A stretch of 64,000 nucleotides of DNA from Blepharisma stoltei ATCC 30299 (Eukaryota; Protista; Ciliophora), in the NCBI GenBank assembly GCA_965603825.1, contig CBFDEM010000064.1, positions 62,001 through 126,000 of the forward strand, in the 5' to 3' direction. The translations under genes were made by a program, and so were the position numbers. Below are positions 4,138 to 48,347 of this stretch, piece after piece; position 1 is the first letter of the stretch, and each line of letters begins with the position of its first letter. Under the pieces are notes generated by a model. That model saw only the letters and a program-made list of their open reading frames with translations, ran no database searches and was not told the DNA's origin.

Positions 4138-4290
4138 TTAAGAGTCGTTCTCCTTAAAGCTGAACGTGATATCAATTGGGAGCTTAGTTTCATCCAAGTC
4201 AGTTGTAACCTTGATCTGATTTACTGTCGATGATTTGACACTCCAAGTTGCTGTAGGATAGGAGGCTTGATTTTTCGTAGCTGTAAAATA
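4138..4290 (-). pseudogene. 3'-terminal fragment of CxxC-rich secreted protein gene
   Basis: Matches the family C-terminal coding sequence (...WSVKSSTVNQIKVTTDLDE...FKENDS*) joined to unrelated DNA. Confidence 0.8.
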
Positions 4291-4629
4291 CTTTTATTTT
4301 TGGTATTACACTGATATAAGAGATGCAAACAGCTGTGACTCTTTTGAAGGACTTGATTTCTATAGTAAAATTCCGAAAAAATGACAAAATACACAAGATA
4401 GGATTGGAATCCGCATGATGATATTAGAGCAAAAGAATGGACTTTTTATCCAGAAAACATAAATGGCATTTAATTAGCTTTCTAATTTTATCTCTCTCAT
4501 GGAATTTATTTATGGGGTTCGGCTTTGACTTAAGAACTTCCAATAGTGTATAGCTTTGTCATATAAGGTAAAGGAACTGCTCAATTCAAGAAGATTAAGT
4601 TTAACTCAGCATATCTGAGAAGGTCACTC

Positions 4630-5308
4630 TTAGGGATATCAAATCTTTTTCGAAAATTGCACAAAATGAGCCAAGTAATATTCAAGTGATAAGGAAATTC
4701 CAAAATATGGTGAATTACTATAAAGATGTACATTACAATTTGATAGTGACCCAGAAATTTTACGTTCACTTTCTTATTGACAAGATTAGGTCTTAGGATG
4801 CAAAGCTTTGAGAGCTTATTGATAAAAAAATCTTAACGCTTTAGAAGTCATTAGAGAAAATCATTAGTGCTATTGGTCCATAAGTAGCTGGAAGATCTGA
4901 AGCTAAAAAGTATCTTAAATCATTTTATTAGAAGAATTGATGAGATATTACCTAGAGAATTAGCTTAGATAGTAAAAACATTATAAAATTATGACTATTA
5001 AATTTTAGAGAGTGATTAATAATAAAATTTAATTGAAAATGGGTTGAATTTGCTGTTTTATATGGCTACATTAAATGATCTTGGAGTTTTAGAATATCTA
5101 GAAACTAAATTGTGTGAAATGCTACCTGATCTTAATAATATTGAAGCAATATTAGGATCGTCTATGAGGTTTTAATAAAGATCGTATAATAAAGAATCAA
5201 AAAAATTTTGCTTGAGCTAAAAATCATTATTCAGCAAAAGATTTAAATATAGAAGATATTAGCCACATCTTAGAATATTCCAAAGATTATTTCTGGAGAA
5301 TATTATCT
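4630..5308 (+). pseudogene. Degenerate RAP-A fragment
   Basis: Homologous to RAP-A 5' half; stops and indels. Confidence 0.85.
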
Positions 5309-5346
5309 GCTTTATTTTTAAACCAAATTAGAGAAAGTTTTTAACT

Positions 5347-7069
5347 TTAAGAGTCGTTCTCCTTAAAGGTGAAGACAATATCAATTGGGAGCTTACTTTC
5401 ATCCAAGTCAGTTGCAACCTTGATCTGATTTACTGTTGATGATTTGATACTCCAAGTTGCTGTAGGATAAACTGCTTGATTTTTCTTAGCTGTAAAAGAA
5501 TTAAATGCTACTGTTTTCGAAAGTGAGTGAGCAAAATCAATAACTGCATCTGGAGAGTCGAAACTCAATTGATATCCTACTTGATCCACTCTGCACGAAG
5601 TTCCATCTTGGACTACTAAGTCAGCACACTTATAACAATTAGGACTAGTAGTGCATGAATTGCACGAATCGGTACATGCTAAATAAATCTTACAAACACA
5701 GCTTGTTTTAGTCGCACTATCATCATAAAGGAAATATCCTGAATTGCATTGAGTGCAGACATCTTTTGAAGAGCAATCCGCACAATTAGAAGGACAATCT
5801 AAATAGAAAAATACCTTTAGCGCATAAGCCTGCTGCATTAATCATATAGCCATTATTGCATATGGCACAAATTGAGCCGCCTTGAGCTGCACAAGCGCAA
5901 TTAGAAATTGTATTAGTTGCGCTGCAAGAGCCACAGCCTAAAGCAGCTCCACTAGAACAGGTTGTACAAGTATAAGCATCAGAAGCCACGCTACAATACT
6001 GCAATTGAGACTGTATACACACTCCTGCTGCGTTGGGGAGATATCCAGCTGAGCATTTCGAGCAATGAGTTGGATCTGCAGTTTTAACGATAACACAATT
6101 AGAAAGAGATGAAAAGGAGCATTTGTCTGAATCATTAGCTATATATCCATCTGAACATGAGGTGCATTTTTTATCGATGGTGCATGCGGTGCAACCAGCA
6201 CTAATTGTGCTGCAATCCTTGCATTGGTTGTTGGATGAATCCCAGTATTCATTGTCCGTGCATCCTGCTGAGTCGCAGTTGGCACCCATAAGGTAATATC
6301 CATCCACACAAGTTTGACAATTGCCTGTACTAGATTCGATCACTTTACAATTGTTAACTGATGATTGAATGCATTTGCCTAGATCATTTACTAAATATCC
6401 TGTCGCGCATTTGGTGCATTGGTTGATATCTGAACATTCTTCACAATTCACGTCAAAGCTGGGACAATTCTTGCAAATGTTATTGAAAGAAAAATACCCT
6501 GTGCTGCATTTAGTGCAAGGAGAACCTCCGATACCGCAAGTATCGCAGTATCAAGCATTGCATGTCGAGCAACCATAATCCGCATTTACATAATATCCTG
6601 AACCACAAGTTATACATTTTCCATCATCAGAGCAAGAAAGACAATTGGCTATTAAGTCAGTGCATGATTCGCAGCGTTGATAATAGTCTGCTTTGCAAGA
6701 TTTGCATACATTAGCAGCAGAAACAAGAGCACAATTTTTAATGAACGAGTTTGTGCATCCGCCATTAGTGTCAGGAATATATTGACTTGTAGTGCAAGTT
6801 CCACAAAGAGTTGCAGATGCACAAGTCTGGCAATTAGCTTGATTATTTGTGCAGGATGCTGTTAGTTTTCTTTCTTTTTCTGTAGCATTTGACCTTATTT
6901 CTTGGCTAGATCCTTGACTATCGTTGTTTTGGAAAAGCAGGTTAAGAATCTCAGTATCTGAAATGGGAGCTGTAAAGTCGCCTTCAGAACTTTCCTCGTG
7001 CTCAATGATGTTGTTTTGCATTGCAGAAGCTTGAAGCATCAGGATAAGAATAAATGCTGGCACTACCAT
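5347..7069 (-). CDS. Secreted CxxC-repeat (furin-like/VSP-like Cys-rich) protein, copy 1, ~563 aa
   Basis: Signal peptide, acidic pro-region ending EKERKL, then CxxC repeats. TGA=Trp at 6551-6553 joins two ORFs. Removing introns 5799-5814 (16 nt) and 5679-5693 (15 nt) gives one frame to TAA at 5347. Confidence 0.9.
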
Positions 7070-9430: not shown

Positions 9431-9840
9431 ATGCGAAAAATCTTTTATTTGTTATTAGACAAACCTGATCTAAAATTTCTCAAACAACATTCTCATACCC
9501 TTTTTAATACAGATTTCAATTATCTTTACAGCTATGTTGATAATTATAATGGGATAGAGATTTACGTTTACGATATTGAATCTCACAAAATGACTATAAA
9601 ATCTTATCGTCCTAATCATCGCATATTAGATAGTATAAAAAATATTGTAAAAATCTCAAAATCAAGATTACTTATCTCGGGGATAATAGCAGAATACTCT
9701 AAAGGATTTACAATGGATTTAGGTAGCAAAAATTTAAGACAAATTTTTCAAAGCAAAGCTCAAACTGGTTCTTTTCATGAGCTCAATAAATTTTTTTGTT
9801 ATGAAAATTATTTGCTTGTATTTGGATGCAAAGGTATGTC
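9431..9840 (+). pseudogene. Fragment of beta-propeller/kelch-like expanded family gene
   Basis: YLYSYVDNYNGIEIYVYDIE and FCYENYLLVFG resemble the fragments at 35.4-36.3 kb; sequence degenerates into a poly-T run. Confidence 0.45.
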
Positions 9841-12325: not shown

Positions 12326-12918
12326 TGATTCAAGTTTAGATCAGAGAAAGTTATTTAACTTTTAAGAGTCATTCTCCTTAAAGCTGAAGTCAATATCAAA
12401 TGGAAGCTTACTTTCATCCAAATCAGTCTGAATGGGGCGAGTAAGGCGTAAAAATCTTGTTGAAATCATCTTTTAAAGTCCATTGATAGCATTGTCAAGC
12501 CCAATGGAAATCAAATTGAGCACATAAAATATAGAAATTTAATTAGATTCTAAATAAGACAAGAGGTAAGGAAAGTTAATTAGCCTTCTAGAAATGTTTT
12601 GCATAAAACTGGAGACAATAACTATTGGCAAATTTACTAAGCATAAGCTGAAATCTTATTGAAAATACCTTTAAGAAGATTAAATAAATATCAATATCTC
12701 TTCATAATAAATTATAATTATACTTGACTTTTAATAAACAGTTCATTTCTATAGATAAGCTGCAATTTCAGCAACACCTTAAAATATGAAGACAAAAATT
12801 TACATAATGAATACATACAAATGGTTTTATTTATGTAATAACTCTCCTCAAACCATTTAAGATTAACTTTCATTTGCCCTTGAGGACTTGCATTTAAAAT
12901 TTTATTAGATAAAGTTAA

Positions 12919-13651: not shown

Positions 13652-15368
13652 TTAAGAGTCGTTCTGGTTAAAGCTGAACGCGACTTCAATTGGAAGCTGA
13701 GAAACATCCAAATCAGTTGTAACCTTGATCTGATTTACTGTCGATGATTTGATGCTCCAACTTCCTGTAGGATAAACGACTTGATTTTTCTTAGCTGTAA
13801 AAGAATCAAATGCTACCGTTTTCGAAAGCGGGTGAGCAAAATCAATAACCACATCTGGAGAGTCGAAACTCAATTTATATCCTACTTTATCCACTCTGCA
13901 CGAACTCCCATCTTGGACTATTACATCAGCACACTTGAAACAAATAGGACTAGTAGTGCATAAATTGCACGAATCGGCACATGCTAAATAAATCTTACAA
14001 ACACAGCTTGTTTTAGTCACACTTTCATCATAAAGGAAATATCCTGAATTGCATTGAGTGCAGACGTCACTCGAAGACCAAGTCGCGCAATTAGAAGGAC
14101 GATCTAAATAGAAAAATACCTTTAGTGCATGAGCCTGCATTAAGCTTATAGCCATCATTACATTTTTTACAAACTGAGCCGCCTTGAGAAGCACAAGCAC
14201 AATCAGGGACTGAATTAATTGGGTAGCAAGAGCCACAGCCAACAGCAGCTCCACTAGAGCAGGTTGTGCAAGTAGTAGCATCAGAGGCCACATCACAATA
14301 CTGCAGATAAGACTGTATACACACTCCTGTTCCGTTGGGGAGATATCCAGTTGAGCATTTCTTGCAATAAGTTGGATCTGATTTTTTAACAATATCGCAA
14401 TGAGAGAGTGATGAAGTGGAGCATTTGCCTTCATCATTAACTATATTTCCAGCTGAGCATGAGGTGCATTTTTTATCTGAGTTGCAAGCGGTGCAAGCTG
14501 TATCAATCGTGCTGCATTCGCTGCAATCCTTAATGCTAGAATCCCAGAATTGAGTGCCTGTGCATGCTATTTGGGCACAGGTGGCACCACTAAGGTAATA
14601 CCCACTCACACAAGTTTGACATGTACTTGTTTGAGAATTGACCACTTGGCAATTTGAAATTGATGATTGAATGCAACTGCCTAAACCATTTGGTAAATAT
14701 CCTCCCACGCATTTGGTGCACGTGTTGCTTCCTGAACATTCTTGACAGTTTGCGTCAAAACTGGAACATGCTTTGCAACTGTTAGTATCTTTATAATACC
14801 CTGCTTTGCATACATTGCAAGCTAAAGTAATTTTATCGCAAATATCGCAGTTTGGATCATAGCATCTCGAGCAAGTAAAGTGCATAGTTATTCCATATCC
14901 TGAATTGCATTTTGTACATTTTCCATCATCAGAGCAAGTAAAACAATTGGCTACTAAGTCACTACATGATGCACAGCCTTGATAATAGCCAACTATGCAA
15001 GAGTCACATACAGTCTGTGCAGAAACAAGAGCGCAATTTCTCATATACGACATGGTGCATCCACCATTAGTGTTAGGAATATAAAGTTGTAGGCAAGTTC
15101 CACAAAGTGTTGTAGATGCACAAGTCTGGCAAGAATTTTGACCAGTTGTGCATGTTGGTGTTAGTTTTCTTTCTTTTTCTGTAACATTTGACCTTATTTC
15201 TTGGCTAGATCCTTGACTCTCGTTGTTTTGGAAAAGCTGGTTAAGAATCTCAGGATCTGTAGTGATAGCTTTAAAGTCACCATCAGAGCTTTCCTCGTGC
15301 TCAATGATGTTGTTTTGCATTGCAGAAACTTGAAGCATCAGAATAAGAATAAACACTGGCACCATCAT
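13652..15368 (-). CDS. Secreted CxxC-repeat protein, copy 2, ~561 aa
   Basis: ORF 14091-15368 with introns 14104-14119 (16 nt) and 13984-13998 (15 nt). Confidence 0.9.
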
Positions 15369-17592: not shown

Positions 17593-19321
17593 TTAAGAGT
17601 CATTCTGCGTAAAGCTGAACACGACATCAATTGGAAGCTGAGAAACATCCAAATCAGTCTGAATCTTGATCTGACTTACTGTCGATGATTTGACACTCCA
17701 ACTTCCTGTAGGGATAACTGCTTGACCTTTAGTAGCTGTAAAAGAATTAAATGCCACCGTTTTCGAAAGTGGGTGGGCAAAATCAATAACTGCATCTGGA
17801 GAGTCAAAACTCAATTGATATCCTACTTTATCCACTCTGCACGAAGTCCCATCTTGGACTATTAAGTCAGCACACTCGAAACAAATAGGACTAGTAGTGC
17901 ATGAATTGCACGAATCGGCACATGCTAAATAAATCTTACAAACACAGCTTGTTTTAGTCACACTTTCATCATAAAGGAAATATCCTGAATTGCATTGAGT
18001 GCAGACGTCTTTCGAAGAGCAAGTCACGCAATTAGAAGAGCAAACTAAATAGAAAAATACCTGGAGAGCATGAGTCTGCATTAAGCTTATAGCCATCATT
18101 ACATTTTTTACAAACTGAGCCGCCTTGAGAAGCACAAGCACAATCAGGGACTGAATTAATTGGGTAGCAAGAGCCACAGCCAACAGCAGCTCCACTAGAG
18201 CAGGTTGTGCAAGTAGTAGCATCAGAGGCCACGTCACAATGCATTAGTTGAGACTGTATGCACCCTCCTACTCCGTTAGAGACATATCCAGTTGAGCATT
18301 TCTTGCAATAAGTTGGATCTGTATTTTTAACAATATCACAATGAGAAAGTGATGAAGTGGAGCATAAGCCTCCTTCATTAACTATATATCCAGCTGAGCA
18401 TGAAGTGCATTTTGCATCTGTGCTGCATGCGGTGCAACCTGTGCTAATTGTGCTGCATTCCTTGCATTGCTTGTTGGCACCATCCCAGTATTGAGTACCT
18501 GTGCATGCTATTTGGGCACAAGAGTTAGTAGCATCAAGATAATACCCGCTCACACAAATACCACATTTGCCTGATTGAGAATTGACAATTTGACAATTTG
18601 GAACTGATAATAAAACGCAAGCGCCTAATTCATTTGCTAAATATCCTCCCCCACATTTGGTGCACTTGTCATTTCCTGAACATGCTTGACAATTCGGGTT
18701 AAAACTGGAGCATGCCTTGCAACTGCTAGAGTCTAAATAATACCCTTCTTTGCATAAACTGCAAGAAGAACCTTCTGAATCGCAAGTATTGCAGTTTGAA
18801 TCTTGGCATCTCGTGCAAGCAAAATCCGTATTTACATGATATCCTGAATCACATTCTGAACATCTTCCATCATTAGAGCAAGTAAGACAACCGTCTATTA
18901 AGTCACTACATGATGCACAGCCTTGATAATAGCCTGCCTTGCAAGAGTTGCATACATCATCGGGAGAAACAAGAGCACAATTTCTCACCGTCGATATGGT
19001 GCATCCACCATCAGTGTCAGGAATAATAGTATATCGACTTGTAAAGCAAGTTCCACAAAGAGTTGCAGATGCACAAGTTATGCAATTAGCTTCATATTCT
19101 TTGCAACTTGGTGTTAGTTTTCTTTCTTTTTCTGTAGCATTTGACCTTATTTCTTGGCTAGATCCTTGACTCTCGTTGTTTTGGAAAGGCTGGTTAAGAA
19201 TCTCAGGATCTGTAATGGGAGCTTTAAAATCACCATCAGAACTTTCCTCGTGCTCAATGATGTTGTTTTGCATTGCAGAAGCTTGAAGCATCAGGATAAG
19301 AATAAACACTGGCACCATCAT
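17593..19321 (-). CDS. Secreted CxxC-repeat protein, copy 3, ~565 aa
   Basis: ORF 18032-19321 with introns 18045-18060 (16 nt) and 17925-17939 (15 nt). Confidence 0.9.
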
Positions 19322-20063: not shown

Positions 20064-21668
20064 ATGGCAATTGAGTCAATCAGACAGTTTATTCATATCC
20101 TAGAAAAGAAGGATTTTATCAAAGAGGTCACAAGCATCTCTAAAAAACTTCAGCAAAACAACAGAGACTCAGCAGCAAAGCAAGCTTGGCAAAACTTATT
20201 AAGTAATTACAAAACCTATCACCAAAATTACAATAAAGATGCAGATCTCTTTTGCACAATGACGTATTGAGCCAAGAAGCTAAGCACGGATGACAACAAA
20301 TTCTGAGAAATCATTGATAATCAAGCACCACTTATAATAGACAGCTTAAAAGGAAGGCCACTAGGACGCTTAGCATATGGGATTTCAGGGAGAGAAGAAC
20401 CAGAAAAATTGGTTATCAACCATTTGATTAAGAATAGAGATAAGCTTTCTTTTCGAGAAATTTCAGAAATAGCTAAAATCATCCCCAAAAATGAGCTAAT
20501 GGAGCTTCTTGTGAGTAAAAACCCAAGTTTCAAAGTTTATAGTGACCAAGATTTATTGTTCTATGTTAGTTCAGTAACAAATATAGGAATTTTAAAATCA
20601 TTAGAAAGCAGCTTTTGTGAGTTACTTCCAAATATAAACGCTTTAGACACTTTTATAAGCATCTTGTATGAATTTTTCAAAAAAGACATTTTATTTGAGG
20701 CAAGTACCATGAATTTACTTGAGCAAAAAATCCTTGCTCTACTAAAGAATTTTGAAATAAAAGACCTTAATAATATATTAAAGGTACTTAACAGCAGTCA
20801 GATATCAGGCCGCTTATCATCTTCATTTTGGGATACTCTTGAAAAGAAAATTGAGAACTCCATAGAAGCTTTTCCTGTCTCTTCTCTTATAAATACTTGC
20901 TCATGAGGCTTATTTTTTAGGCCTAAACTATTTGAGACCTTAATTAATAATTGGCGATCTATTATTGATAGAAGAAGACAAAGGGATTTTTTTAGAGAAG
21001 GCTTTTGTTCTCTAGCGCTAACACCTTATTTTACTGAAGATTTGATGACTTGAAGCAAATACTGGATTTTAAGGATGATGAAAAAATTTGACGGTTTAGA
21101 TATATTGAGTATTATGAGAACACTTGTTATTATTAATAATTATGATACTGAAATATGAAATGCTTTGACAGATAAATTTTCACAAGAGTCTTATAAAACT
21201 TTAAAGAGAAAAGAAAAATCTGCAGCATTTTATATTGCACTTTGCCTAGACATTGATAAGCCAAGTGAATATTTGCAATGAAATAGAAAAATACTGGAAC
21301 ATATAGATGATGATTACAAAGTAGATAGAGTTGTGCATGAAAGCGACGAAAATGAAAATAAAATTCATTATTTTTTAAATACCCATGGCACTCCTGCTGT
21401 AAAGCATCTTAAAATTAATGATATTTATACTGCAAATATAGTTATACAAAGCAAAAAAATCATCATTGAATATTTGCCTGCACATCTTAACATTTCCCAG
21501 CATACTTCGCAACTAATCCCTAAATCTTTACAAAAAATCCGCCACTTAAGAGCCTTAAAATGGCATGTTATCTACATCTCTAACATGACAAATTTCGAAG
21601 AATCTCTGTCCCAAGCCATATCCACCCTTTCATCACAAAGAACTCCACACTTTATCCATATTATTTAA
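20064..21668 (+). CDS. Helical-repeat protein with C-terminal RAP-like domain (RAP-B), ~534 aa
   Basis: ORFs 20064-20270, 20409-20906 and 21333-21668 are one frame via TGA=Trp. C-terminal KKIIIEYLPAH...QKIRHLRALKWHVIYI is RAP-like. Confidence 0.85.
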
Positions 21669-21676
21669 CTAATAGT

Positions 21677-27699: not shown

Positions 27700-29407
27700 A
27701 TGGTGGTGCCAGTGTTTATTCTTATCCTGATGTTTGGAGCTTCTGCAATGCAAAACAACATCATTGAGCACGAGGAAAGTTCTGATGGTGACTTTATTGC
27801 TCCTATTACAGATCCTGAGATTCTTAACCAGCTTTTCCAAAACAATGATAGCCAAGGATCTAGCCAAGAAATAAAGCCAAATGCTACAGAAAAAGAAAGA
27901 AGACTAGACTCACCAACCTGCACAAGTGATCAAGCTAATTGCCAGACTGTGCATCTGCAACACTTTGCGGAACTTGCAAAACAGCTAGCTATATTCCTGA
28001 CATTAGTGGCGGATGCATCCAAACTCATGTGAAAAATTGTGCTATTGTTTCTTCCTATGATTCATGTAGTGTTTGCAAAGCAGGCTATTATCAAGGCTGT
28101 ACATCATGCGATGACTTAATTCCAGGTTGTAATGATTGCACTGATGATGGACAATGCATAACTTGCGGTTCAGGATATCACCTAGATGATTCGACTGCAA
28201 CTTGCGTGGCTTGCAGCAATCCTCTTTGCGATTCTTGCCCAGGTGATACTTGCAGCAAATGCAAGCCAGGGTATCTCTTATACATGGGAGATTGTACACA
28301 ATGCTCCAGTCCTATACCAAATTGCCAAGAATGCTGAGACAGCACCTTATGCACCAAATGTAAGACAGGGTATATTCTAAATGAAAATGACCAATGCACC
28401 GAATCATCAATACTAAATTGCCGTCGACTTAATTCTGGTGCAATGCAATGTACAATTTGTGCGAGCGGGTATTACCTTAGTGGTAGCTCGTGTACTTAAA
28501 TTCCATGCGCAAGCAATCAATACTGGGATGATTACAACAAGCAATGCAAGGATTGCAGCTTAATTACTTCATATTGCATCGGTTGCTCCATAGATGGAAA
28601 ATGCACTTTATGCTCAAGTGGTTATGCAATTAGTAGTGCTGGCTCATGCCTCGCTTCAACTCTTTCTCATTGCGCACTGGTTGATTATTCAGATCCAAGT
28701 AATTGCTTGGGATGCCTCACTGGATATATCAATGGCGGAGCAGGAGGGTGCATACAGTCTCCACTAATGTATTGCAACAAGGTCTCTGATGCTTATACTT
28801 GCACAGCCTGTTCTACTGGAGCAGCTAACGGCTGTGGCTCATGAACGCACTTAATACAATCCCTAATTGTGTTTGTGCTGCTCATGGCGGCTCATTTTGC
28901 ATCAAATGCAATGATGACTCTATTCTTAATGCAGGCTCATGCACTAAAGGTATTTTTCTATTTAGTTTGTCCTTCTAATTGTGCGGATTGCACTTCGAGA
29001 AACGTATGCACTCAATGCAATTCAGGATATTTCCTATATTACGAGAGTGCGACTAAAATAAGCTGTGTTTGTAAGATTTATTTAGCATGTGCCGATTCGT
29101 GCAATTTGTGCACTAATAGCCCTATTTGCTTCAAGTGTGCTGACTTAATAGTCCAAGATGCAGAGTGGATAAAGTAGGGTTTCAAATAGGCTTTGAAGAT
29201 CCATATATCGTTATTGATTTTGCTAACCCACTTTCGAAAACGGTAGTTTTTAAGTCTTTTACAGCTAAGAAAGATCAAGTTACTATTCCTACAGCAGGTT
29301 GGAGTATCAAATCATCGACAGTAAACCAAATCAAGGTTCAGACTGATTTGGATGAAAGTAAGTTTCCAATTGATATTGTGTTTACCTTTAAAGAGAATGA
29401 CTCTTAG
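27700..29407 (+). pseudogene. CxxC-repeat gene, full-length pseudogene
   Basis: 1-nt deletion at ~27947, premature TAA at ~28497, further indels at ~28843 and ~29160. 16-nt intron 28950-28965 is still present. Confidence 0.85.
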
Positions 29408-31092: not shown

Positions 31093-31094
31093 TT

Positions 31095-31330
31095 AGTGAT
31101 TCTTGCTTAATTTCATTGATTTTTAACTTTTTTCAACTAAAATTTTGATTATGGCTTGTTTGGTTTGAGAGTTTGCTTCTAAAAGAAGCGGCTGAATATC
31201 ATGAGAAAGCTCAGATGATTTTGAATGCTTAATAATGTGAGCCTTGCAAATAAGGGTGCGTGGAGAAGTGCACTTACAAAACCTTGGCTTTTTGAGTGCA
31301 TTTCGGATAAAAACACATATGATTTTCCAT
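31095..31330 (-). pseudogene. N-terminal Cys/His (B-box-like) fragment of a host gene abutting the retroelement
   Basis: MENHMCFYPKCTQKAKV/CKCTSPRTLICKAHIIKH with frameshifts. Confidence 0.55.
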
Positions 31331-34500: not shown

Positions 34501-34956
34501 ATTCGGAAACTCATAGGAATTTTTTTTTTGCAATTCATCAGAAAGCACGATAAATTTATTTCAATTTAAAAAATCAACAAGAGCTGAAAGTGCATTTTGA
34601 TGCGCTTTTGATGAGTAGTGGGTAAAAAACCTCCAATCACTGTAAGAGTTTTCAATGTTTTCAAGACTGATTACTATTGATTGGGTTTGACTCGCGAAGC
34701 TATTGATGCACTCGGCCAAAGAAAAGCTTGAAGTCAGGTCAATTATGGCTTGCATGTCTCCGTCTTGATGCAAAATGTCAGAGCAAGAAGTTATTAATAC
34801 ATTCTTTAGAGCTATTTGGTCAGCAAAAGTTTGCAACAGTGATACTGATAAGTTATTTGCAAGCTCTATGTCTGTCAAATTACTATGGAATAATCCTATG
34901 AGCATTTGACACCAAATAATTTGGAAGGAAAAGTAAAAAATTCAATAACCTTTCAT
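31513..34956 (-). CDS. Venus-flytrap/ANF-receptor-like ectodomain + multi-pass TM protein, ~1147 aa
   Basis: All minus-strand ORFs here share one frame via TGA=Trp. Signal peptide, then LTDEAAFPEFMRV, FN(W)KHINVYY, FSFDSAMLLA, FTGCSGTVSI, then roughly seven hydrophobic segments including DCSVFC(W)KDSH. Confidence 0.85.
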
Positions 34957-35399
34957 TTTTGTCACATTAATTCAACGAAAGACTATTAGCCATTTTCAGT
35001 ACGTAAAAGAAGTTTTAATAAATTGTCGGCTGATTCCTTGAAATTAAAAATCTTAAAATTGTGAAATTTTTTTATTATAAAATTAATAGTTTATGGATAA
35101 TAAACTAATCTAAGCAAAAAATAATAAAAATAATCCTAATTTTTGGAATTAATACTTAATCTGGTATAAAAGCTTTTTTATATAAAGAAATAACATGGCA
35201 TTTGTTGGAATTTCTGATAGCGCGACATATATAATTAAAATATATATGCTTGGATTTTCTAGTCTACTGACCAGAAGTATATTTTCAATAATTATAGCAC
35301 CATAAATTTCTCTTGTCACTTCAGAGTTTATAATAATGAAATAATATAATTTATTAAAAGATAGTTATAAATACAATCCTTTCTTTGTACTAAATTTTA

Positions 35400-37025: not shown

Positions 37026-37310
37026 ATGGTAGTGCCAGCGTTTATTCTAATCCTGATGCTTGAAGTTTCTGCAATGCAAAACAACATCATTGAGCATGAG
37101 GAAGTTTTGATGGCAACTTTAATACTCCAATTAAAGATCCTGAGGTTCTTAATCAGCTTTTCCAAAACAACGATGGTCAATTAGTGAGCAAAGAAATAAG
37201 GTCAAATGCTACAGTAAAGAAAGAAAACTAACACCAACCTGTGCAGAAGGTCAAAATAATTGCCAGACTTGTGCATCTGCAACCCTTGCAGATTTTGCAC
37301 AACAACTCTT
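37026..37310 (+). pseudogene. 5' fragment of CxxC gene
   Basis: Signal and pro-region only; frameshifted and truncated. Confidence 0.85.
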
Positions 37311-38137: not shown

Positions 38138-39852
38138 ATGGTGTTGCCAATGTTTATTCTTATCCTGATGCTTCAAGCTTCTGCAATGCAAAACAATATT
38201 ATTGAGCATGAGGAAAGCTCTGATAGTGACTCTAAAGCTCCTATTACAGATCCTGAGATTCTTAATCAGCTTTTCCAAAACAATGATAGTCAAGGATCTA
38301 GCCAAGAAATAAGGTCAAATGTTACAGAAAAAGAAAGAAAACTAACAGCAACCTGCACAAATGGTGAAAATAATTGCCAGACTTGTGCATCTCCAACACT
38401 TTGCGGAACTTGTCTGCAAACTAATGCTATTCCTGACATTAATGGAGGATGCACCCAAACATATTTAAAAAATTGTGCTCTTGTTTCTTCCGATACTGTA
38501 TGTAGCTCTTGCAAAGCAGGCTATTATCAAGGCTGTAAATCATGCAGTGACTTAATTCCAGGTTGTACTGCTTGTTCTGATGATGGGAGATGCGTAACTT
38601 GTGGTCCAGGATATCAACTAGATGATATGACTTCAACTTGTGTGGCTTGCAGTAATCCACTCTGCGATTCTTGCTCAAGTGGTTCTTGCAGTAAATGCAA
38701 GCCAGGGTATTTTGCAGACGCTGGCACTTGTAAAGAATGTTCCAGTTCTATTACACGTTGCCAAGAATGCTCAAAGAGTGACCAATGCACCAAATGTGCG
38801 GCAGAATCAACATTAAATCACAATTCCCAATGCACCCTTGATTGAAAATCAAACTGTATTGTACTTAATTCTGGTACAATGAATTGTATAACTTGTGAGA
38901 GTGGATATTACCTTATTGGTGGTCGTGTGCCCAAATACTATGCATAAGCACTGAATACTGGGATGGCACAAGCAAGCAATGCATTGCATGCAGCACAATT
39001 GATCAAAAATGCATCGCTTGCACCTCAGATAAAAAATGCACCTCATGCTCAGGTGGTTTAATAGCTAGTGAATCAGGCTTTTGCTTCATTTCATCTCTTT
39101 CTAATTGCGCTATGGTTAAAGCTACAGATCCAAATTATTGCGTGAAATGCAAAACTGGATATATCTCTAACGGGGCAGGAGGGTGTATACAGTCTCAACT
39201 AAAGTATTGTGATGCGGCTTCTGATGCTTATACTTGCACAACCTGTTCTACTGGAGCTGCTAAAAGCTGTGGCTCATGCAACGCAATTAATACTCTCACT
39301 AATTGTGCTTGTGCTTCTCAAGAGGGCTCATTTTGTGTCAAATGCAATGATGGCTATATTGTTAAAGCAGGCTCATGCTCTAAAGGTATTTTCTATTTAG
39401 ATTGCTCTTCTAATTGTGAGGATTGCACTTCGAAAGACGTATGCACTCAATGCAAGTCAGGATATTTCCTTTATTATGAAAGTGCGTCTAAAACAAGCTG
39501 CGTTTGTAAGATTTATTTAGCATGTGCCGATTCGTGCAATTTGTGCACTACTCGTCCTATTTGTTTTGATTGTGCTGGCTTAATAGTCCAAGATGGAAGT
39601 TCGTGCAGAGAGGATAAAGTAGGGTATCAATTGAGTTTCGACTCTCCATATATCGTTGTTGATTTTGCCCACCCGCTTTCGAAAGCGGTAGCTTTTGATT
39701 CTTTTACTGCTAAGAAAGGTGAAGTTGTTGTTCCTACAGGAGGTTGGAGTGTCAAATCATCGACAGTAAGCCAGATCAAGGTTCAGACTGATTTGGATGT
39801 TTCTCAGCTTCCAATTGATGTCACCTTCAGCTTTAAGGAGATTGACTCTTAG
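38138..39852 (+). pseudogene. CxxC-repeat gene with a single 1-nt frameshift
   Basis: TGA at 38843 is Trp. ggtggtcgtgt at ~38920 lacks one base relative to paralogs; otherwise intact. 15-nt introns at 39386-39400 and 39506-39520. Confidence 0.75.
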
Positions 39853-39914
39853 AAGTTAATTAACTTTCTCTATTCTTAATCAGATGATTAACTAATTTTT
39901 CTGGCTCTGCTTTT

Positions 39915-40500
39915 ATCTGAAATCCCATATGATAAACGTCCTAATAGCCTTCCTTTTAAGCTGTCTATTATAAGTGCTTTATTATCAATGATTTCTCAGA
40001 ATCTTTTGTCATCTGTACTTAGTTCTTAGCTTAATACGTCATTTTGCAAAAGAGATCTGTATTTTTATTGTAATTTTGGAGATAATTTTGAAATTACTTA
40101 ATAAGCTTTGCAAAGTTTGCTTTGCTGCTGAGTCTTTGTGGTTTTGCTGATGCTTTTAGAGATGTTTGTGACTTTTTTGATAAAATCGTTTTTTCAAGGA
40201 TATGAATAAATGCCTGATTGACTCAATTATCGTTTAATATATATAATTAATAAATTATTTATCGATATGCATAAATTGTGGATTATTTTGTTGATTTTCT
40301 AAAGAACTCAGACTTTTAGCAATGGAATCTCAAAATTTTTCATTTCTGATATATCATATTATGTGAGAAATACGCCAAGGGCGCCCTAAAAATTCAATGA
40401 TAATTTTCTTTTCAGGCATTATTAAATCCACCTCCTACAATTCATTAATTCTGTAATTTGCTGCAACTTCAAATACCTTGTTCAGGTCTTCATGTTTCTT
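39915..40500 (-). pseudogene. RAP-A 3' remnant followed by RAP-B 5' remnant
   Basis: Homologous to 50707-51010 and to the reverse complement of 20064-20395. Confidence 0.8.
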
Positions 40501-41441
40501 TTTATAATTAAATAAATCCATTCTTCTTAATAAATAGCATTATGAATTCTTTAATTTCTTCATCAAAAATAACTTTCTTTAATAATTTTAATTTAAAACC
40601 AAATATTCACTAAATGTTGATTCTTTTAAATCTTCAAATTTTAATTCATAAGAGTCACGGTCAAACGAAAATAAATTTTTACAAAAAATGCAATTCATCG
40701 AAGTTATTAATTTCCTATTGTGATCATTAAGAAAATAGCACAAAATGACTTCACATAAGAATTGTAACTCTTATTTGTAAGAGGTTTGAAATTAAAAATT
40801 ATGTTTATAACTTTCGATCAATCCACTTCAATGAACTTTCCTTGATTTTCTGAAAATATAGATTTTTCTCTTTTTTAATTCTTTTCGAGTTGATGATTTC
40901 AGTAGTTATAATAAATTCTTGTTGTCTCGGAAGTTTCAATTATCGGATTGTGCATTTTAAAAATTGATTTCTTAAGGGAGAATAAATTAAAAAATTATCA
41001 TTTTTTAATATTTGATAGCCAAATGTGAATTAAATACAGGGCTGCTTCTTTGAAGCTTTAGAAATTTTAATTACTCTCATAGCTAATATAATTTATGCTG
41101 AAAGTGTGGAAATTGTTATAATTTCAAGCCATTTTTGGTGGCCTTATAATTTATACAGGCCATGCAGTAAATATCAAATGACTTTCTTAATTCCAGAAAT
41201 AGACTAGCTTCAATTATTAGCTATTAACCGCGACTTTTTTGGCTAAAAATACAGTCATAGCTCCTCTTCTAGAAAAAAAAAAATTATTTTTAGAAAGTAG
41301 AAATTTTAAAGCATAATAATTTGCAAAAATTAAACAACTTTAGTTCAATTGATGAATTTTCATAAAGCTAATTCCTTAAGGATGAAATATTCACATAAGT
41401 CGAAAATTTTTTCCCTTTTTTAAAATGCTTAATAAAAATAT

Positions 41442-41730
41442 ATGGTAGTGCCAGCGTTTATTCTAATCCTGATGTTTGAAGTTTCTGCAATGCAAAACAA
41501 CATCATTGAGCACGAGGAAAGTTTTGATGGCAACTTTAATACTCCAGTTAAAGATCCCGAGGTTCTTAATCAACTTTTCCAAAACAACGATGGTCAATTA
41601 GTGAGCAAAGAAATAAGGTCAAATGCTACAGTAAAGAAAGAAAACTAACACCAACCTGTGCAGATGGTCAAAATAATTGCCAGACTTGTGCATCTGCAAC
41701 ACTTTGCAAATTTTGCATAACAACTCTTGC
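41442..41730 (+). pseudogene. 5' fragment of CxxC gene
   Basis: Frameshift at the ERKL site, then truncated. Confidence 0.85.
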
Positions 41731-42545
41731 TATCATGCATACATCGAATACTCCAAAATTCTTTAAGGGAATTAATTTTCTCTAATCAATTTTTAATACT
41801 TGATAGCTAAATATTAATTAAATAAAGGTTTGTTTGTTTTAAGATTTAAATTTTAATTACTCTTATAAAACTAAAATAATTTGTGCTGAATTTATTCGAA
41901 ACGTTATATTTTTCGAGCCATTTTTGGTGACTTTATAATTTATACAGGCCATGCAGTAAATATCAAGTAACGTTCTTAATTCCAGAAATAGACTAGCTTC
42001 AATTATTAGCTATTAACTGTGACTTTCTTGACTAAAAACACAGTCATAGCTCTTTGCTAGAAACAATAAAATTATTTTTAGCAAGTAGAAATTTTAAAGC
42101 ATTATTGTTTATGCACAACAGCTTTGCATTAATTCGAATGAACAAGTAAGGGACTCTTATTTTAGACAAAGGATTATTTAGAAATGCGGTATCTATAATA
42201 GAGATCTAGGAAAATACCTTTGAAATATATAAATAAACTTAAGCTGGTATGATCGAGGCAAGTGCTTAGAAAATATTTGGAGGCATGCGCTGGTTTTTAA
42301 GATCAGCTCAGGATTGAAAATGATTAAGCATTTAAAATGCTGCTTAGTTGGTGAGAATCATAACAGAATTGCAAATAAAGATGCTAAGCTCTAGCATCTA
42401 GCTGCAATTTTATTGCAAAAATTTTAAACAGCTTTTAGAAATATTACATAAAAAATTCAAAACACTGAATAAACCTAAATTTTCCCTTAAGGCTGAATTG
42501 TTTAATCGATTTTTTCCACTTAATTTAAAAGCTTAATAAAAATAA

Positions 42546-44261
42546 ATGGTGTTGCCAATGTTTATTCTTATCCTGATGCTTCAAGCTTCTGCAATGCAAA
42601 ACAATATCATTGAGCATGAGGAAAGCTCTGATGGTGATTTTAAAGCTCCCATTACAGATCCTGAGATTCTTAACCAGCTTTTCCAAAACAACGATGATCA
42701 ATTATTGAGCCAAGAAATAAGGTCAAATGCTACAGAAAAAGAAAGAAAACTAACAGCAGCCTGCACAAATGGTGAAAATAATTGCCAGACTTGTGCATCT
42801 GCAACACTTTGCGGAACTTGCCTGCTTTCTAATACTATTCCTGACATTAATGGAGGATGCACCCAAACATATTTAAAAAATTGTGCTCTTGTTTCTTCCG
42901 ATACTGTATGTAGTGCTTGCAAAGCAGGCTATTATCAAGGCTGTAAATCATGCAGTGACTTAATTCCAGGTTGTACTGCTTGCTCTGATGATGGGCGATG
43001 CGTAACTTGTGGTTCAGGATATCTACTAGATGGTATGACTTCAACTTGCATGGCTTGCAGTAATCCACTCTGCGATTCTTGCCCAAATAATATGTGCATA
43101 AAATGTAAGTCAGGGTATTTTGCAGACGGTAGCACTTGCAAAGATTGCCCCAGCTATATGACAGGTTGCCAAGAATGCTCAAATAGCGACAAATGCACCA
43201 AATGTGTGACAGGATATATACTAAATGAAAATTCCCAATGCACCCAATCATCAATACCAAATTGTATTGCACTTAATTCTGGTACAATGCTATGTGTAAC
43301 TTGTGCGAGTGGATATTACGAGAATGGTGGCTCGTGCACTCAAATACCATGCACAAGCACTCAATACTGGGATGCTACCTTAAAGGAATGCAAGGGATGC
43401 AATACAATTAATTTAAGTTGCATTACTTGCAGCTCATATCCAAGATGCACTTCATGTTCAGCTGGAAAAATAGCTGATGATTATGGCTTATGCACCCCTT
43501 CAACTCTTTCTAATTGTGCTATGGTTAGAGCTACAGATCCAAATTATTGCGTGAAATGCTCCACTGGATATACCTCTAACGGAGCAGGAGGGTGTAGATG
43601 GTCTCCACTAAAGTATTGTAATGCAGTTTCTGATGCTTATACTTGCACAGCCTGCTCTAGTGGAGCTGCTAATAGCTGTGGCTCATGCAACGCAATTAAT
43701 TTATTCCCTAATTGTGCTTGTGCTTCTCAAGAGGGCTCATTTTGTGTCAAATGCAATGATGGCTATATTGTTAAAGCAGGCTCATGCTCTAAAGGTATTT
43801 TCTATTTAGATTGCTCTTCTAATTGTGAGGATTGCACTTCGAAAGACGTATGCACTCAATGCAAGTCAGGATATTTCCTTTATGATGAAAGTGCAACTAA
43901 AACAAGCTGTGTTTGTAAGATTTATTTAGCATGTGCCGATTCGTGCAATTTATGCACTAATAGTCCTATTTGTTTTGAGTGTGCTGACTTAATAGTCCAA
44001 GATGGAAGTTCGTGTAGAGTGGATAAAGTGGGATATCAATTGAGTTTCGACTCTCCAGATGCAGTTATTGATTTTGCTCACGCGCTTTCGAAAGTGGTAG
44101 CTTTTGATTCTTTTACAGCTAAGAAAGGTGAAGTTGTTGTTCCTACAGGAGGTTGGAGTGTCAAATCATCGACAATAAGCCAGATCAAGGTTCAGACTGA
44201 TTTGGATGTTTCTCAGCTTCCAATTGATGTCACCTTCAGCTTTAAGGAGATTGACTCTTAG
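42546..44261 (+). CDS. Secreted CxxC-repeat protein, intact, ~561 aa spliced
   Basis: Uninterrupted ORF containing two in-frame 15-nt introns (43795-43809, 43915-43929). Confidence 0.9.
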   Translation: MVLPMFILILMLQASAMQNNIIEHEESSDGDFKAPITDPEILNQLFQNNDDQLLSQEIRSNATEKERKLTAACTNGENNCQTCASATLCGTCLLSNTIPDINGGCTQTYLKNCALVSSDTVCSACKAGYYQGCKSCSDLIPGCTACSDDGRCVTCGSGYLLDGMTSTCMACSNPLCDSCPNNMCIKCKSGYFADGSTCKDCPSYMTGCQECSNSDKCTKCVTGYILNENSQCTQSSIPNCIALNSGTMLCVTCASGYYENGGSCTQIPCTSTQYWDATLKECKGCNTINLSCITCSSYPRCTSCSAGKIADDYGLCTPSTLSNCAMVRATDPNYCVKCSTGYTSNGAGGCRWSPLKYCNAVSDAYTCTACSSGAANSCGSCNAINLFPNCACASQEGSFCVKCNDGYIVKAGSCSKGIFYLDCSSNCEDCTSKDVCTQCKSGYFLYDESATKTSCVCKIYLACADSCNLCTNSPICFECADLIVQDGSSCRVDKVGYQLSFDSPDAVIDFAHALSKVVAFDSFTAKKGEVVVPTGGWSVKSSTISQIKVQTDLDVSQLPIDVTFSFKEIDS

Positions 44262-44324
44262 AAGTTAATTAACTTTCTCTATTCTTAATCAGATGATTAA
44301 CTAATTTTTCTGGCTCTTCTCTCT

Positions 44325-45846
44325 GTGAAATCCCATATGCTAAACGTCCTAATGGCTTTCATTTTAAGCTGTCTCTATTATAAGTGCTTTATTATCAATG
44401 ATTTTCCAGAATCTTTTATCATCTGTACTTAGCTTCTTAGCTCAATACGTCATTATAATAAAGAGATCTGCATTTTTATTGTAATTTTTGAGATAAGTTT
44501 GTAATTACTTAATAAGTTTTGCTAAGTTTGCTGCTGAGTCTCTGTGGTTTTGATAAAGCTTTTTAGAGATTTTTGTGATTTTTTTGATAATATCGTTCTT
44601 TTCTAGGACATGAATGAACTGTCTGATTGGCTCAATTACCGTTTAATATAATTAATAAATTATTTATCGATATCCATGAATTGTGGATTATTTTGTTGAT
44701 TTTCTAAAGAACTCAGACTTTTAGCAATGGAATCTCAAAATTTTTCATTTCTGATATTCCTATAGCATTCCAACCTAGTATATTTAAATGGCGGATTTTT
44801 GTTGCGTTCTCGGGTCAACTTGCACATTATGAGAGAAATATGCCAAGGGCGTCCTAAAAATTCAACGATAATTTTCTTTTCAGGCATTATCAAGTCCACC
44901 TCTTATAATTCATTAATTCTGTAATTAGCCGCAGCTTCAAATTCCTTGTCCTTCAGAAAATCCAAGATTATCCGCTCCCATTTTCCTTTAATTCTATTAT
45001 CCGGCACATTCTTATAAGAATCCGCAATATTTCCTATGATTTTTTCTTTCCATTCTAAATATCCATCAGGCTTGCCAATATCAAAACAAACAGAAACATT
45101 GAGTGCAGACAATTTTTCTTTATCATTGATTTTCTGATAAATATATTTAGAAAATCTCTCAATAAAAGGATTCCAGATTTCAGGATCATAATTACTAATT
45201 AGCGTAAGCGCTTTCATTATAATTACTGTGCCATATCCAGTGAATTTATTCATCATTTTCAATATATGATGCTAATTTTACTCCTATAATCCCCCAAGTA
45301 ATATATGGGGTATTAGCTAGAGCTGTAAATCCTTCCCTAAAGACCTCGACTTCTGTATATAATTCAACTAATATTATCTGCATATTATTAAGATCAGATA
45401 GCATTTCACAAAATTTAGTTTCTAGATATTCTAAAACTCCAGGATCATTAAAGGCTGTCACATAAAACAGCAAATCCAGCCCGTTTCCAATTAAAATTTT
45501 GGTATAATCACTTGCAAAAAGATTCAATAGTTCAGAGTTTGGTAATTTTTTTACTATCTAAGCTAGTTCTCTAGGTAAGAGCTCATCAATTCTTCTAATA
45601 AAATGATTTAAGATAGTTTTCAGCTTCAGGTCTTCCAACTACCCCATGGGCCAATAGCGCTAATGATTTTCCTCTAATGATTTCTAAAGCGTTAGGGGTT
45701 TCTTTATCTATTAGCTCTCAGAGCTTATCATGTGATCCAATCTTGTTTGCCCAATAAGAAAGTGTACATAAAACTTCTGTGTCACTATTAAATTGTAAAT
45801 GCACATCTTTATAGTAATTCACTTTATTTTGGAATTTCCTTCTTAC
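44325..45846 (-). pseudogene. RAP-A pseudogene with internal deletion plus RAP-B 5' remnant
   Basis: ORFs 45246-45527 and 44903-45262 match RAP-A, with ~300 nt missing at ~45370. 44325-44643 matches the RAP-B start. Confidence 0.85.
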
Positions 45847-46767
45847 TAAAAGGAAGATATTCTCAAACCGGATTACCTAAAATTGGTATTGGCCAGTTTA
45901 TAAAAATAAAATGCAAGGCTTAGCACTGGAGACAGAATAAGCTGAGCTTTAAAAAGAGAGCGGATGTAAATGCAAAAAAATCTGAAGGTAAAACTCCACA
46001 GCATTATGCTTGAGAAAAGAGTGATACGGAAATGGTTCGAAATCCCTCAATTAGGTGAAGAGGGACAAATCATTTGATGATTAGACTTAGGAGATTGGTA
46101 ATCTGAATATTTAAAAATATCTATAGCTTATAGAGACTTTAAAGCTAAATTAAATTAATGGAGATATAGCCATATTTATAAAAATGAAAGAATTCTATAA
46201 AGTAGCCAACTTTAAAAGGAAAAGCGGGCATATGGCATTAATAAGCTCTGCAATTGCAATTTAGAGGCATGTAGGACTAAAGAGTAAAGAGAATTAATAA
46301 TTCGCTAATCAAAGGGGAACTAATTAAAAAATCATCAATTTTATATTTGATAGCTAAACGTGAATTAAATAAAGAGTTGCTAGTTTAAGGCTAAAAAATT
46401 TAATTAATCTTTATAAAACTAAAGTATTCTATGCTGAAAGTGTTGAAAATCGTTATAATTTCGAGCCATTTTTGACTGGCCTTAAACTTATACAGAAAAT
46501 GTATTAAATATTAAATAGACAAAGCCATTAAGGCCTGCCTAAATATTAATCGAGGTGCATGTGCTGGTTTTTAAAATCAGCTCAAGATTGAGATTGATTA
46601 AGCATTCAAAATGCTGCTTAATCTGTGAGAACCATAGCAAGGCTATGAACAAAGATGATACTAGCAGCAATTATATTGTAAAAGTTTGGAAATTTTGCAA
46701 TAAAAATTAGTTGATAAATTTTTAATAGATTTAATCGGCTACTTTATCTATGGCCTATTGAAAATAT

Positions 46768-48347
46768 ATGGTATTGCCAGCGTTTATTCTTATCCTGATG
46801 ATTGAAGCTTCTGCAATGCAAAATAGCATCATTGAGTATGAGGAAAGCACTGATGGTGACTTAAAAGCTCTCATTACAGATCCTGAGATTCTTAATCAGC
46901 TTTCCCAAAGCAACGACAGTCAAGGATCCAGTCAAGAAATAAGGTCAAATGCTACAGAAAAAGAAAGAAAACTAACAGCAACCTGCACAAATGGTGAAAA
47001 TAATTGCCAGACTTGCGCATCTGCAACACTTTGCGGAACTTGCCTGATTTCTAATACTATTCCTGACACTAATGGCGGATGCACCTCATCTTCTTTAAAA
47101 AATTGTGCTCTTGTTTCTTCCGCTACTGTATGTAGCATTTGCAAATCAGGCTATTATCAAGGTTGTGCATCATGCGGTGACTTAATTCCAGGTTGTACTG
47201 CTTGTTCTGATAATGGAATATGCACAGCTTGTGGTTCAGGATATGGACTAGATGGTTCGTCTGGAACTTGCAGGGCATGCAATATTCAACACTGCAATTC
47301 TTGCACTGGTAGTAATTGCGATATATGCAATCCAGGGTCTTTTGCGAACAGTGGCGGCACTTGTACACAATGTTCCAGCTCTATTACAAATTGCCAAGAA
47401 TGCTCAAAGAGCAACCAATGCACCAAATGTGAGGCAGGATCTGCAGTAAATCAAAATGACCAATGCTCCCAGACATCAAAACAAAACTGTATTGTACTTA
47501 GTTCTGATACAAGTCTATGTGCAACTTGTGAGAGCGGGTATTACGTTCATAATGGCTCGTGTGCCAAAATTCCATGCGCAAGCAATAAATACTGGGATGA
47601 TTCCAGCAAGCAATTCAAGGATTGCAAAGATCTTGATTTAAATTGCATCGCTTGCTCCTCAGATAAAAAGTGCACTTCATGTTAAGCTGGTTTAACAGCC
47701 AATGAAGCAGGCAAATGCGGCAGTTCTTCTGTTTCTAATTGCTCTGTGATTAAAACTTCAAATGCATCTTATTGCGTAAAATGTTCAACTGGATATATCT
47801 CTAACGGGGCAGGAGGGTGTATACAGTCTCAACTAATGTATTGTAATGTGGCTTCTGATGCTTATACTTGCACAACCTGTTCTAATGGAGCTGCTAAGGG
47901 CTGTGGCTCATGCAACGCAATTAATACAATCCCTAATTGTGCTTGTGCTTCTTCTGACGGATCATTTTGTGCCACGTGTAATGATGGTTATATTCTTAAG
48001 GCAGGCGTATGCACTCTAGGTATTTTCTATTTAGTTTGTCCTTCTAATTGCGCGGCTTGCACTTCAAAAGACATATGCACTAAATGCAATTCAGGATATT
48101 TCCTTTATTATGAAAGTGCGACTAAAACAAGCTGTGTTTGTAAGATTTATTTAGCATGTGACAATTTGTGAAATTTATGTCTACTAGTAATATTTGTTTT
48201 GAGTGTGCTGACGTAATATTCAAAGATGGAAGCTCATGCACAATGGATAAAGTAGGATATCAAATAAGCTTTGAATCTCCATATATCGTTATTGATTTTG
48301 CTCACCAGCTTTCGAAAACGGTGGCATTTGATTCCTTTACAGCTAAG
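46768..48347 (+). pseudogene. CxxC-repeat gene pseudogene, 3'-truncated
   Basis: TCA>TAA at 47683, indel at ~48160, and homology ends at acagctaag (48347). Confidence 0.85.

What the first reader, a model, noticed from the sequence alone, without database searches (positions are those of the whole stretch)
4138..48347. Array of secreted CxxC proteins with constant ends, variable middle and a pseudogene reservoir
There are at least 12 copies or fragments: 4 intact, 3 long pseudogenes and 5 fragments. All share a highly conserved signal plus acidic pro-peptide and a conserved ~80-aa Cys-free beta-rich C-terminal domain. The central CxxC repeats keep Cys spacing but vary strongly between cysteines. 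This constant-variable-constant design with silent copies resembles antigen or receptor diversification arrays (Giardia VSP, ciliate i-antigens). Unlike those, the spliced product has no TM or GPI tail. This is the best candidate for an undescribed variable secreted-protein system (inference).
Basis: partly seen in the sequence, partly recalled or inferred. Interest (0 to 1): 0.85.

Follow-up and report, generated by a model that had tools for sequence, protein, structure and literature searches.

The report
Fast-evolving secreted ciliate cysteine-rich proteins
The ciliate Blepharisma carries a tandem cluster of genes for secreted cysteine-rich proteins whose middles are being rewritten by strong positive selection, and these share an undescribed tail domain with about sixty other secreted proteins, which suggests a variable set of soluble binding proteins rather than a silent-copy switching system.

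Summary
The genome is Blepharisma stoltei (UGA=Trp, 15/16-nt introns). The window holds 12 copies: 4 intact (561-565 aa), 3 long broken, 5 fragments; two more intact copies lie on contig C35. The CxxC middle is under strong positive selection (dN/dS 1.3-1.7 overall, about 40% of sites at 3.3-5, far outside simulated nulls); the ends give 0.54-0.65. There is no TM or GPI tail. RNA contigs show one copy spliced and at least four copies transcribed in bulk. Gene conversion occurs, including one 12-nt tract most simply read as fragment-to-gene, but it lies in the pro-peptide; I found no cassette donation into the variable middle. The C-terminal domain has no Pfam match, models as an Ig-like beta-sandwich, ends about 60 secreted Blepharisma proteins with different heads (CxxC, LamG-like, a protease), and appears related to the juxtamembrane domain of ciliate multipass receptors. 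A sister LamG-head array is also positively selected. Best reading: a birth-and-death family of soluble, receptor-derived binding proteins; ligand unknown. Constant-variable-constant Cys-rich families are known in ciliates (Paramecium SAg, Tetrahymena Ser); the anchorless form and shared tail look new. Earlier scan notes flagged related arrays elsewhere in this genome.

The parts
42546..44261 (+). Copy K, intact: signal peptide (aa 1-16), acidic pro-peptide ending in R-K-L (17-69), 66-Cys CxxC rod (70-480), Cys-free Ig-like tail (481-561)
   Evidence: spliced transcript in two RNA-type runs
43795..43809 (+). K intron 1 (15 nt)
   Evidence: left out in both RNA-type runs and in neither DNA run
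43915..43929 (+). K intron 2 (15 nt)
   Evidence: RNA contigs end at 43914 and continue with the letters that follow 43929
42696..42707 (+). Short conversion tract in the K pro-peptide: 5 alleles shared only with broken fragments H and J
   Evidence: (p about 3e-4 before correction, about 0.03 after)
42996..43535 (+). Most variable part of K (aa 151-330), positively selected between the cysteines
44016..44258 (+). Cys-free C-terminal Ig-like beta-sandwich domain of K
5347..7069 (-). Copy B, intact, 563 aa; introns 5799-5814 and 5679-5693
   Evidence: B-specific alleles in an RNA contig
13652..15368 (-). Copy D, open frame, 561 aa, two Cys lost; introns 14104-14119 and 13984-13998
   Evidence: expression not tested
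17593..19321 (-). Copy E, intact, 565 aa; introns 18045-18060 and 17925-17939
   Evidence: E-type alleles in an RNA contig
27700..29407 (+). Copy F, pseudogene: frameshifts near 27947, 28843 and 29158, TAA at 28497
38138..39852 (+). Copy I, young pseudogene and sister of K: single 1-nt deletion after 38922, all 66 Cys kept
   Evidence: deletion bridged without a gap by 505-nt contigs in four runs
46768..48347 (+). Copy L, pseudogene: TAA at 47683, frameshift after 48180, 3' end cut off by an insertion
4137..4288 (-). Fragment A: last ~49 codons of the tail domain
12362..12433 (-). Fragment C: last ~23 codons
29520..29826 (+). Fragment G: ~100 codons of the variable middle
37026..37290 (+). Fragment H: signal, pro-peptide and first Cys, frameshifted
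41442..41725 (+). Fragment J: sister of H, frameshifted
48348..50576 (-). Decayed retroelement-like insertion that truncates copy L
   Evidence: endonuclease remnant PF03372 E=0.002, below cut-off; six dispersed matches at 68-77%; related piece near 29900-31130

Best explanation
A tandem birth-and-death gene family. Units of 2.5-4 kb are duplicated, probably by unequal crossing-over, and copies die by frameshift, truncation or insertion. Living copies are transcribed together in the population and make secreted pro-proteins (signal peptide, acidic pro-peptide probably clipped after R-x-L, a disulfide-stapled CxxC rod, an Ig-like tail). The cysteines and G-Y motifs hold the scaffold, while the residues between them are driven to change by positive selection, most likely because they bind something that itself evolves (prey or parasite surfaces, predator ligands, or non-self cells). 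Short gene-conversion tracts shuffle and homogenise pieces, mostly near the ends. The tail is a common module, probably inherited from the juxtamembrane domain of LamG/CxxC multipass receptors, so the proteins look like freed receptor ectodomains; it probably serves as a docking, assembly or sorting handle. Shown: gene structure, splicing, transcription of several copies, selection, recombination signal, family size. Modelled or weakly supported: the tail fold and its receptor origin. Inferred: secretion, pro-peptide cleavage, ligand binding and the tail's role.
For: Codon models with a separate tree per segment: M0 1.34-1.74 in aa 151-330, M2a vs M1a 2dL 52-83 with 37-48% of sites at 3.3-4.8; 0.54-0.64 at the ends. 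Holds with the six intact copies only (2dL 97; M8 vs M8a 97) and with indel neighbourhoods masked (2dL 87). 40 simulations without positive selection but with recombination and double-base mutations gave 2dL at most 10.5 and M0 at most 0.87. Sister units K and I differ by 2.9% upstream and 19-28% in the middle. Co-located duplicate pairs are purifying (0.23 and 0.41). Several copies are in bulk RNA contigs. Tail at the very C-terminus of CxxC, LamG-like and M8-protease proteins. Sister LamG array: head 2dL 71-195, stalk 0.54, tail 0.27. Receptor link.
Against: No ligand, localisation or proteomic evidence. Signal peptide judged by hydropathy and motif only. Silent divergence is also raised in the middle (K/I 14 of 110 third positions vs 2.9% upstream, p=1e-5), so part of the variability comes from older sequence brought in by recombination. 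The full-length model is unusable (pLDDT 38). The receptor link is weak by profile comparison (probability 4-12%, E 0.002-0.012). My codon models are a home-made implementation with scaled, not fully re-optimised, branch lengths and naive Bayes site calls.
Confidence: 0.62

Rival explanations
1. A variant surface coat like Giardia VSP or ciliate i-antigens: one copy is expressed per cell, held on the surface through the tail domain, with silent copies as a cassette reservoir.
For: Same constant-variable-constant design as Paramecium SAg (PMC4235209); weak to passing Pfam VSP scores; one fragment-shared tract in K; PHI p=0.001 and AU tests show mosaic history.
Against: No TM, CRGKA tail or GPI signal; at least four copies in bulk RNA contigs; no tract in the variable middle survives correction; broken copies look like ordinary decay, including a retroelement-like hit.
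Confidence: 0.12
2. [quoted passage not shown] Compatible with the best explanation, differing in route and role of the tail.
For: The tail is always C-terminal on unrelated secreted heads; acidic pro-peptide (12 D/E in 53 aa); the Tetrahymena precedent (PMC3824020).
Against: The fold is Ig-like, not crystallin; the apparent origin from a receptor stalk explains its terminal position without a sorting role; no localisation data.
Confidence: 0.15
3. Mating or kin-recognition proteins, diversified by sexual or self/non-self selection.
For: Secreted, fast-evolving and multi-copy; Blepharisma uses a secreted glycoprotein pheromone (abstract and title of PMC10892320).
Against: No link to conjugation was tested; the RNA runs could not be assigned to stages; about 60 tail-bearing genes with lectin-like and protease heads fit a broader role.
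Confidence: 0.08
4. No adaptive meaning: relaxed constraint between cysteines plus gene conversion at the ends produces the pattern.
For: Seven or eight of twelve copies are dead or decaying; silent divergence is also higher in the middle; recombination is present.
Against: Average dN/dS exceeds 1 even with invariant Cys counted; the likelihood ratios lie far outside neutral-plus-recombination simulations.
Confidence: 0.03

Closest known systems
Paramecium surface antigens (SAg) and Tetrahymena Ser immobilization antigens
   Same: Ciliate multigene families of Cys-periodic secretory-pathway proteins, tandem arrays, conserved ends with a high-dN centre, pseudogenes proposed as conversion donors (PMC4235209, PMC4136848).
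   Different: Those are GPI-anchored and, for the main serotypes, mutually exclusive. These have no hydrophobic tail, end in an Ig-like domain and carry an acidic pro-peptide.
Giardia VSP / CRMP / SCRP cysteine-rich families
   Same: Signal peptide plus many CxxC motifs; Pfam VSP E 3e-12 for copy D, 1e-4 for K; SCRPs are likewise anchorless.
   Different: No conserved TM or CRGKA tail, which define VSPs (bioRxiv 2022.03.07.483299); the match rests on CxxC composition; no evidence of one-per-cell expression.
Tetrahymena Grt1/Igr1 mucocyst proteins
   Same: Different secreted heads share one small C-terminal beta domain.
   Different: That domain is beta/gamma-crystallin and shown to target mucocysts (PMC3824020); here it models as Ig-like and its role is untested.
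Ciliate giant LamG/CxxC multipass receptor-like proteins
   Same: LamG-like and CxxC modules; the domain that follows their last CxxC resembles the tail domain.
   Different: They continue into several TM helices; the proteins here stop right after the domain.
S-layer / CopC-type Ig-like domains (Sap, SbsC, CrdA; Big_5)
   Same: Best structural matches, Z 5.1-5.7, rmsd 2.5-4.8 A over 66-82 residues; Atlas TM 0.56 to a Big_5 cluster.
   Different: Z below 8 and 8-13% identity show only a common beta-sandwich; no homology or function claim.

Membership tests
Giardia VSP | Signal peptide and multiple CxxC motifs | tested here: met
   25 CxxC motifs, hydrophobic N-terminus
Giardia VSP | Conserved C-terminal TM helix | tested here: not met
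   mean hydropathy of the last 19 aa -0.33 to 0.24; no window above 1.3 after aa 30
Giardia VSP | CRGKA cytoplasmic tail | tested here: not met
   C-termini shown
Giardia VSP | One gene expressed per cell, with switching | tested here: inconclusive
   at least four copies in bulk RNA contigs; no single-cell data
Ciliate i-antigens (SAg/Ser) | Periodic Cys scaffold with signal peptide | tested here: met
   the periodicity is furin-like CxxC, not shown to be the Ser or SAg block
Ciliate i-antigens (SAg/Ser) | C-terminal GPI signal | tested here: not met
   no hydrophobic tail in any intact copy; all 30 family loci examined stop after or within the domain
Ciliate i-antigens (SAg/Ser) | Variable centre with high dN, conserved ends | tested here: met
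Ciliate i-antigens (SAg/Ser) | Surface location and serotype switching | not testable with these tools
   needs antibodies and clonal or single-cell data
Silent-cassette conversion systems (VSG-like) | Pseudogene segments copied into the variable region of an expressed gene | tested here: not met
   no corrected-significant tract in aa 151-330; one 12-nt tract in the pro-peptide; one strain only, short or old tracts could be missed
Tetrahymena Grt/Igr granule proteins | [quoted passage not shown] | tested here: not met
   no Pfam hit; model matches Ig-like sandwiches
Birth-and-death multigene family under diversifying selection | Tandem duplicates, recurrent pseudogenes, sites with dN/dS above 1 | tested here: met

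The most novel reading that the evidence does not exclude
Blepharisma has a soluble recognition repertoire: about 60 secreted proteins with positively selected heads of different folds (CxxC rods, LamG/ConA-like domains) joined to one constant Ig-like tail taken from its own receptor stalks, the tail acting as a common handle that links bound prey or parasites to the cell, like an opsonin's constant region in a single-celled eukaryote.
Probability: 0.2. Interest if true: 0.82.

Novelty: new variant of a known kind. Interest (0 to 1): 0.55.

Why it matters
Why free-living ciliates keep variable cysteine-rich protein families is an open question. Here the variable proteins are anchorless, the selection signal is strong and mapped to sites, two different head types under selection share one undescribed tail, and the organism is culturable with a public genome and RNA series. 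That gives concrete baits to find what a free-living protist is racing against, and a new small domain that may be a sorting or docking signal of heterotrich ciliates. I found no paper describing the family in the searches run, which cover only open-access text.

Tried and rejected
Bacterial-code ORF lists split genes at TGA and were replaced by table 4. Assembly error as the cause of the copy I frameshift: rejected, four runs agree with the assembly. Hidden TM or GPI exon after the stop: none in 30 family loci. Neutral drift, recombination or double mutations as the source of dN/dS above 1: rejected by simulation. Full-length fold without alignment: useless, pLDDT 38. Pfam, PDB sequence search and Atlas feature search for the tail: nothing meaningful; Foldseek PDB gave no E below 0.08. 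Direct profile search of 54 proteins, mostly giant ciliate Cys-rich ones, found only one marginal hit; the link emerged only on the post-CxxC segments.
Full report
Organism and gene models. The window is C64:62001-126000 of a 41.46-Mb, 64-contig genome; homologue records name Blepharisma stoltei, whose MAC genome is described as 41 Mbp in 64 contigs with 15-16-bp introns and UGA read as Trp (PMC9942806). Reading TGA as Trp joins split ORFs of the window into frames of 1176, 1081, 741 and 701 aa. With that code and two tiny introns per gene, four copies are open from start to stop (K, B, D, E; 561-565 aa), and public records give the same products for K and E. F has three frameshifts and a TAA, L has a TAA, a frameshift and a retroelement-like insertion, and I has a single 1-nt deletion. 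Five fragments complete the twelve. Two more intact copies lie on C35; the pro-peptide matches only these eleven loci. The copies sit in duplicated units of 2.5-4 kb that also carry decayed pieces of neighbouring genes.

Protein anatomy. A hydrophobic signal ending in A-x-A, a 53-aa acidic pro-peptide (12 D/E, 5 K/R) ending in R-K-L, a rod of 66 Cys with 25 CxxC motifs and recurring G-Y motifs, and an 81-aa Cys-free tail. No TM or GPI-like segment. Signal and cleavage sites are inferred from sequence, not predicted by a dedicated tool. Pfam gives only VSP, from CxxC composition, and nothing for the pro-peptide or tail.

Is the middle really diversifying? Identity falls from 0.82 (aa 1-69) to 0.48 (151-240) and returns to 0.78 (416-561). 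In the youngest pair, K and I, upstream DNA differs by 2.9% and the middle by 19-28%. Codon models on nine copies, each segment with its own tree, give M0 0.56-0.63 for aa 1-69, 1.03-1.23 for 70-150, 1.34-1.45 for 151-240, 1.62-1.74 for 241-330, 1.12-1.34 for 331-415 and 0.54-0.64 for 416-561; M2a beats M1a by 2dL 41-83 in aa 70-330, with 37-48% of sites at 3.3-4.8 in aa 151-330. The result holds for the six intact copies alone (2dL 97; M8 vs M8a 97) and after masking around indels (2dL 87). Forty simulations without positive selection, with up to three shuffled genealogies and up to 10% double-base mutations, never exceeded 2dL 10.5 or M0 0.87. Two unrelated duplicate pairs in the window give 0.23 and 0.41. 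The models are my own implementation, so an independent rerun is advisable.

Mosaicism and the reservoir idea. PHI gives p=0.001, and AU tests reject end trees for the middle and the reverse; silent sites in the K/I middle are more diverged than the flank (p=1e-5). Recombination is therefore real. A run test finds one corrected-significant tract, between intact D and E at gene nt 1078-1230, and none in the middle. K carries five alleles within 12 nt (42696-42707) that only fragments H and J share, while its sister I has the common state. The simplest reading is one conversion from a broken fragment into K, but direction is not proven and the tract is in the pro-peptide. So broken copies can exchange sequence, but the variable middle is built mainly by selected point changes, not cassettes.

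Expression. On 38150-44149, two runs lack K intron 1 and break at intron 2 into the next exon, while two DNA runs keep the introns, which shows that those runs are RNA and that K is spliced. Contigs with other letters at 43992-44030 carry the allele sets of B, of E, and of a C35 copy, so at least four copies are transcribed in bulk cultures. The I deletion is bridged without a gap in all four runs. The contig unique to the I middle has depth 16 and 8 against 219 and 95 for K in the RNA runs, and similar depths in DNA; the tool warns that contig depth is a poor measure, so this only suggests low output from I. Single-cell exclusivity cannot be judged.

The tail domain. With a 28-sequence alignment it models at pLDDT 86 as an all-beta domain. 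Best matches are Ig-like sandwiches of S-layer and CopC type at Z 5.1-5.7 and TM 0.56-0.61: a common fold, no function implied. The profile finds 76 matches in this genome, about 60 near full length, in clusters on C26, C35, C48, C21, C14, C64 and others. All 30 loci read stop at or within the domain. Among 1.84 billion representatives it finds 32 proteins, three of them spurious or partial; those with a named source are B. stoltei or B. japonicum, and unnamed environmental contigs show the same LamG-CxxC-tail layout with TGA read through. Heads differ: CxxC rods up to 939 aa, LamG/ConA-like domains, a leishmanolysin-type M8 protease and a 2863-aa LamG/Cys giant. In the C26/C35 LamG-head subfamily the head is positively selected (2dL 195, or 71 after masking around gaps) while stalk and tail give 0.54 and 0.27; the C48 long-rod subfamily shows the same direction on four copies.

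Origin. The segment after the last CxxC in three environmental LamG/CxxC membrane proteins resembles the tail: best score 19.6 bits against a shuffled maximum of 11.7; profile comparison E 0.002-0.012 but probability only 4-12%. A profile of that segment finds 43 loci in this genome, mostly on C61, C6, C29, C63 and C12, and two of the weakest tail hits (C12:181171 and C6:288041) fall on those loci, same strand. I read this as moderate evidence that the secreted family descends from receptor ectodomains cut after the stalk domain; the Blepharisma receptor loci themselves were not read.

Comparison and verdict. Conserved ends with a high-dN centre, tandem arrays and pseudogene donors are described for Paramecium SAg (PMC4235209) and tandem Ser arrays for Tetrahymena (PMC4136848); both are GPI-anchored. 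VSPs are defined by a TM helix and CRGKA tail (bioRxiv 2022.03.07.483299). The array fails those membership tests but evolves like them. A shared C-terminal domain on unrelated secreted heads recalls Tetrahymena Grt1/Igr1 (PMC3824020), with another fold. Verdict: real, adaptive, and a new anchorless variant of a known kind; ligand and location unknown. Remote searches used references or database records only; the joined step for my own spliced models was left out of all search tools.

Noticed in passing
G000:C26:13000-37300 and C35:418000-434700 (L032-L038): Sister array of secreted LamG/ConA-head proteins with the same tail; head strongly positively selected, at least two copies frameshifted.
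   Followed up: partly
G000:C48:467000-487200 (L039-L041): Long CxxC-rod members (about 940 aa) with a pro-peptide ending in R-Q-L and the same tail; variable in the N-terminal half.
   Followed up: partly
P0022 / L051: A leishmanolysin-type M8 protease from a TGA=Trp transcriptome ends in the same tail domain.
   Followed up: partly
G000:C61, C6, C29, C63, C12: 43 loci match the juxtamembrane domain of LamG/CxxC membrane proteins; probable source of the tail domain; sequences not fetched.
   Followed up: partly
window 48348-50576 and about 29900-31230: Two diverged retroelement-like remnants, each abutting a truncated array copy (L and fragment G); non-LTR elements are reported in this MAC genome (PMC9942856).
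   Followed up: partly
window 20064-21665(+) and 50710-52314(-): Two intact ~535-aa RAP-domain-like genes, with decayed pieces repeated inside the duplicated units.
   Followed up: partly
window 1-1335 and 31516-35273: Duplicated ANF_receptor-domain membrane protein gene, 90% identical, dN/dS 0.23.
   Followed up: partly
L031:6039-7733 (C35 copy N): This intact copy lacks intron 1, with six coding bases in its place; the public model starts at an internal Met (406 aa) and keeps intron 2.
   Followed up: no
L052/L053: Metatranscriptome-like contigs with the tail domain have one in-frame TAA inside the Cys region and end in TAA TAA near a poly(A), as in ciliates with context-dependent stop codons; one codon only.
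   Followed up: no
window 40352-40358: Both DNA runs show a joint that skips 5 letters here, outside the genes; possible assembly discrepancy or excision footprint.
   Followed up: no
window 5347-7069 and 13652-15368: Copies B and D were not returned by the protein database search although K and E were; their public models may differ.
   Followed up: no
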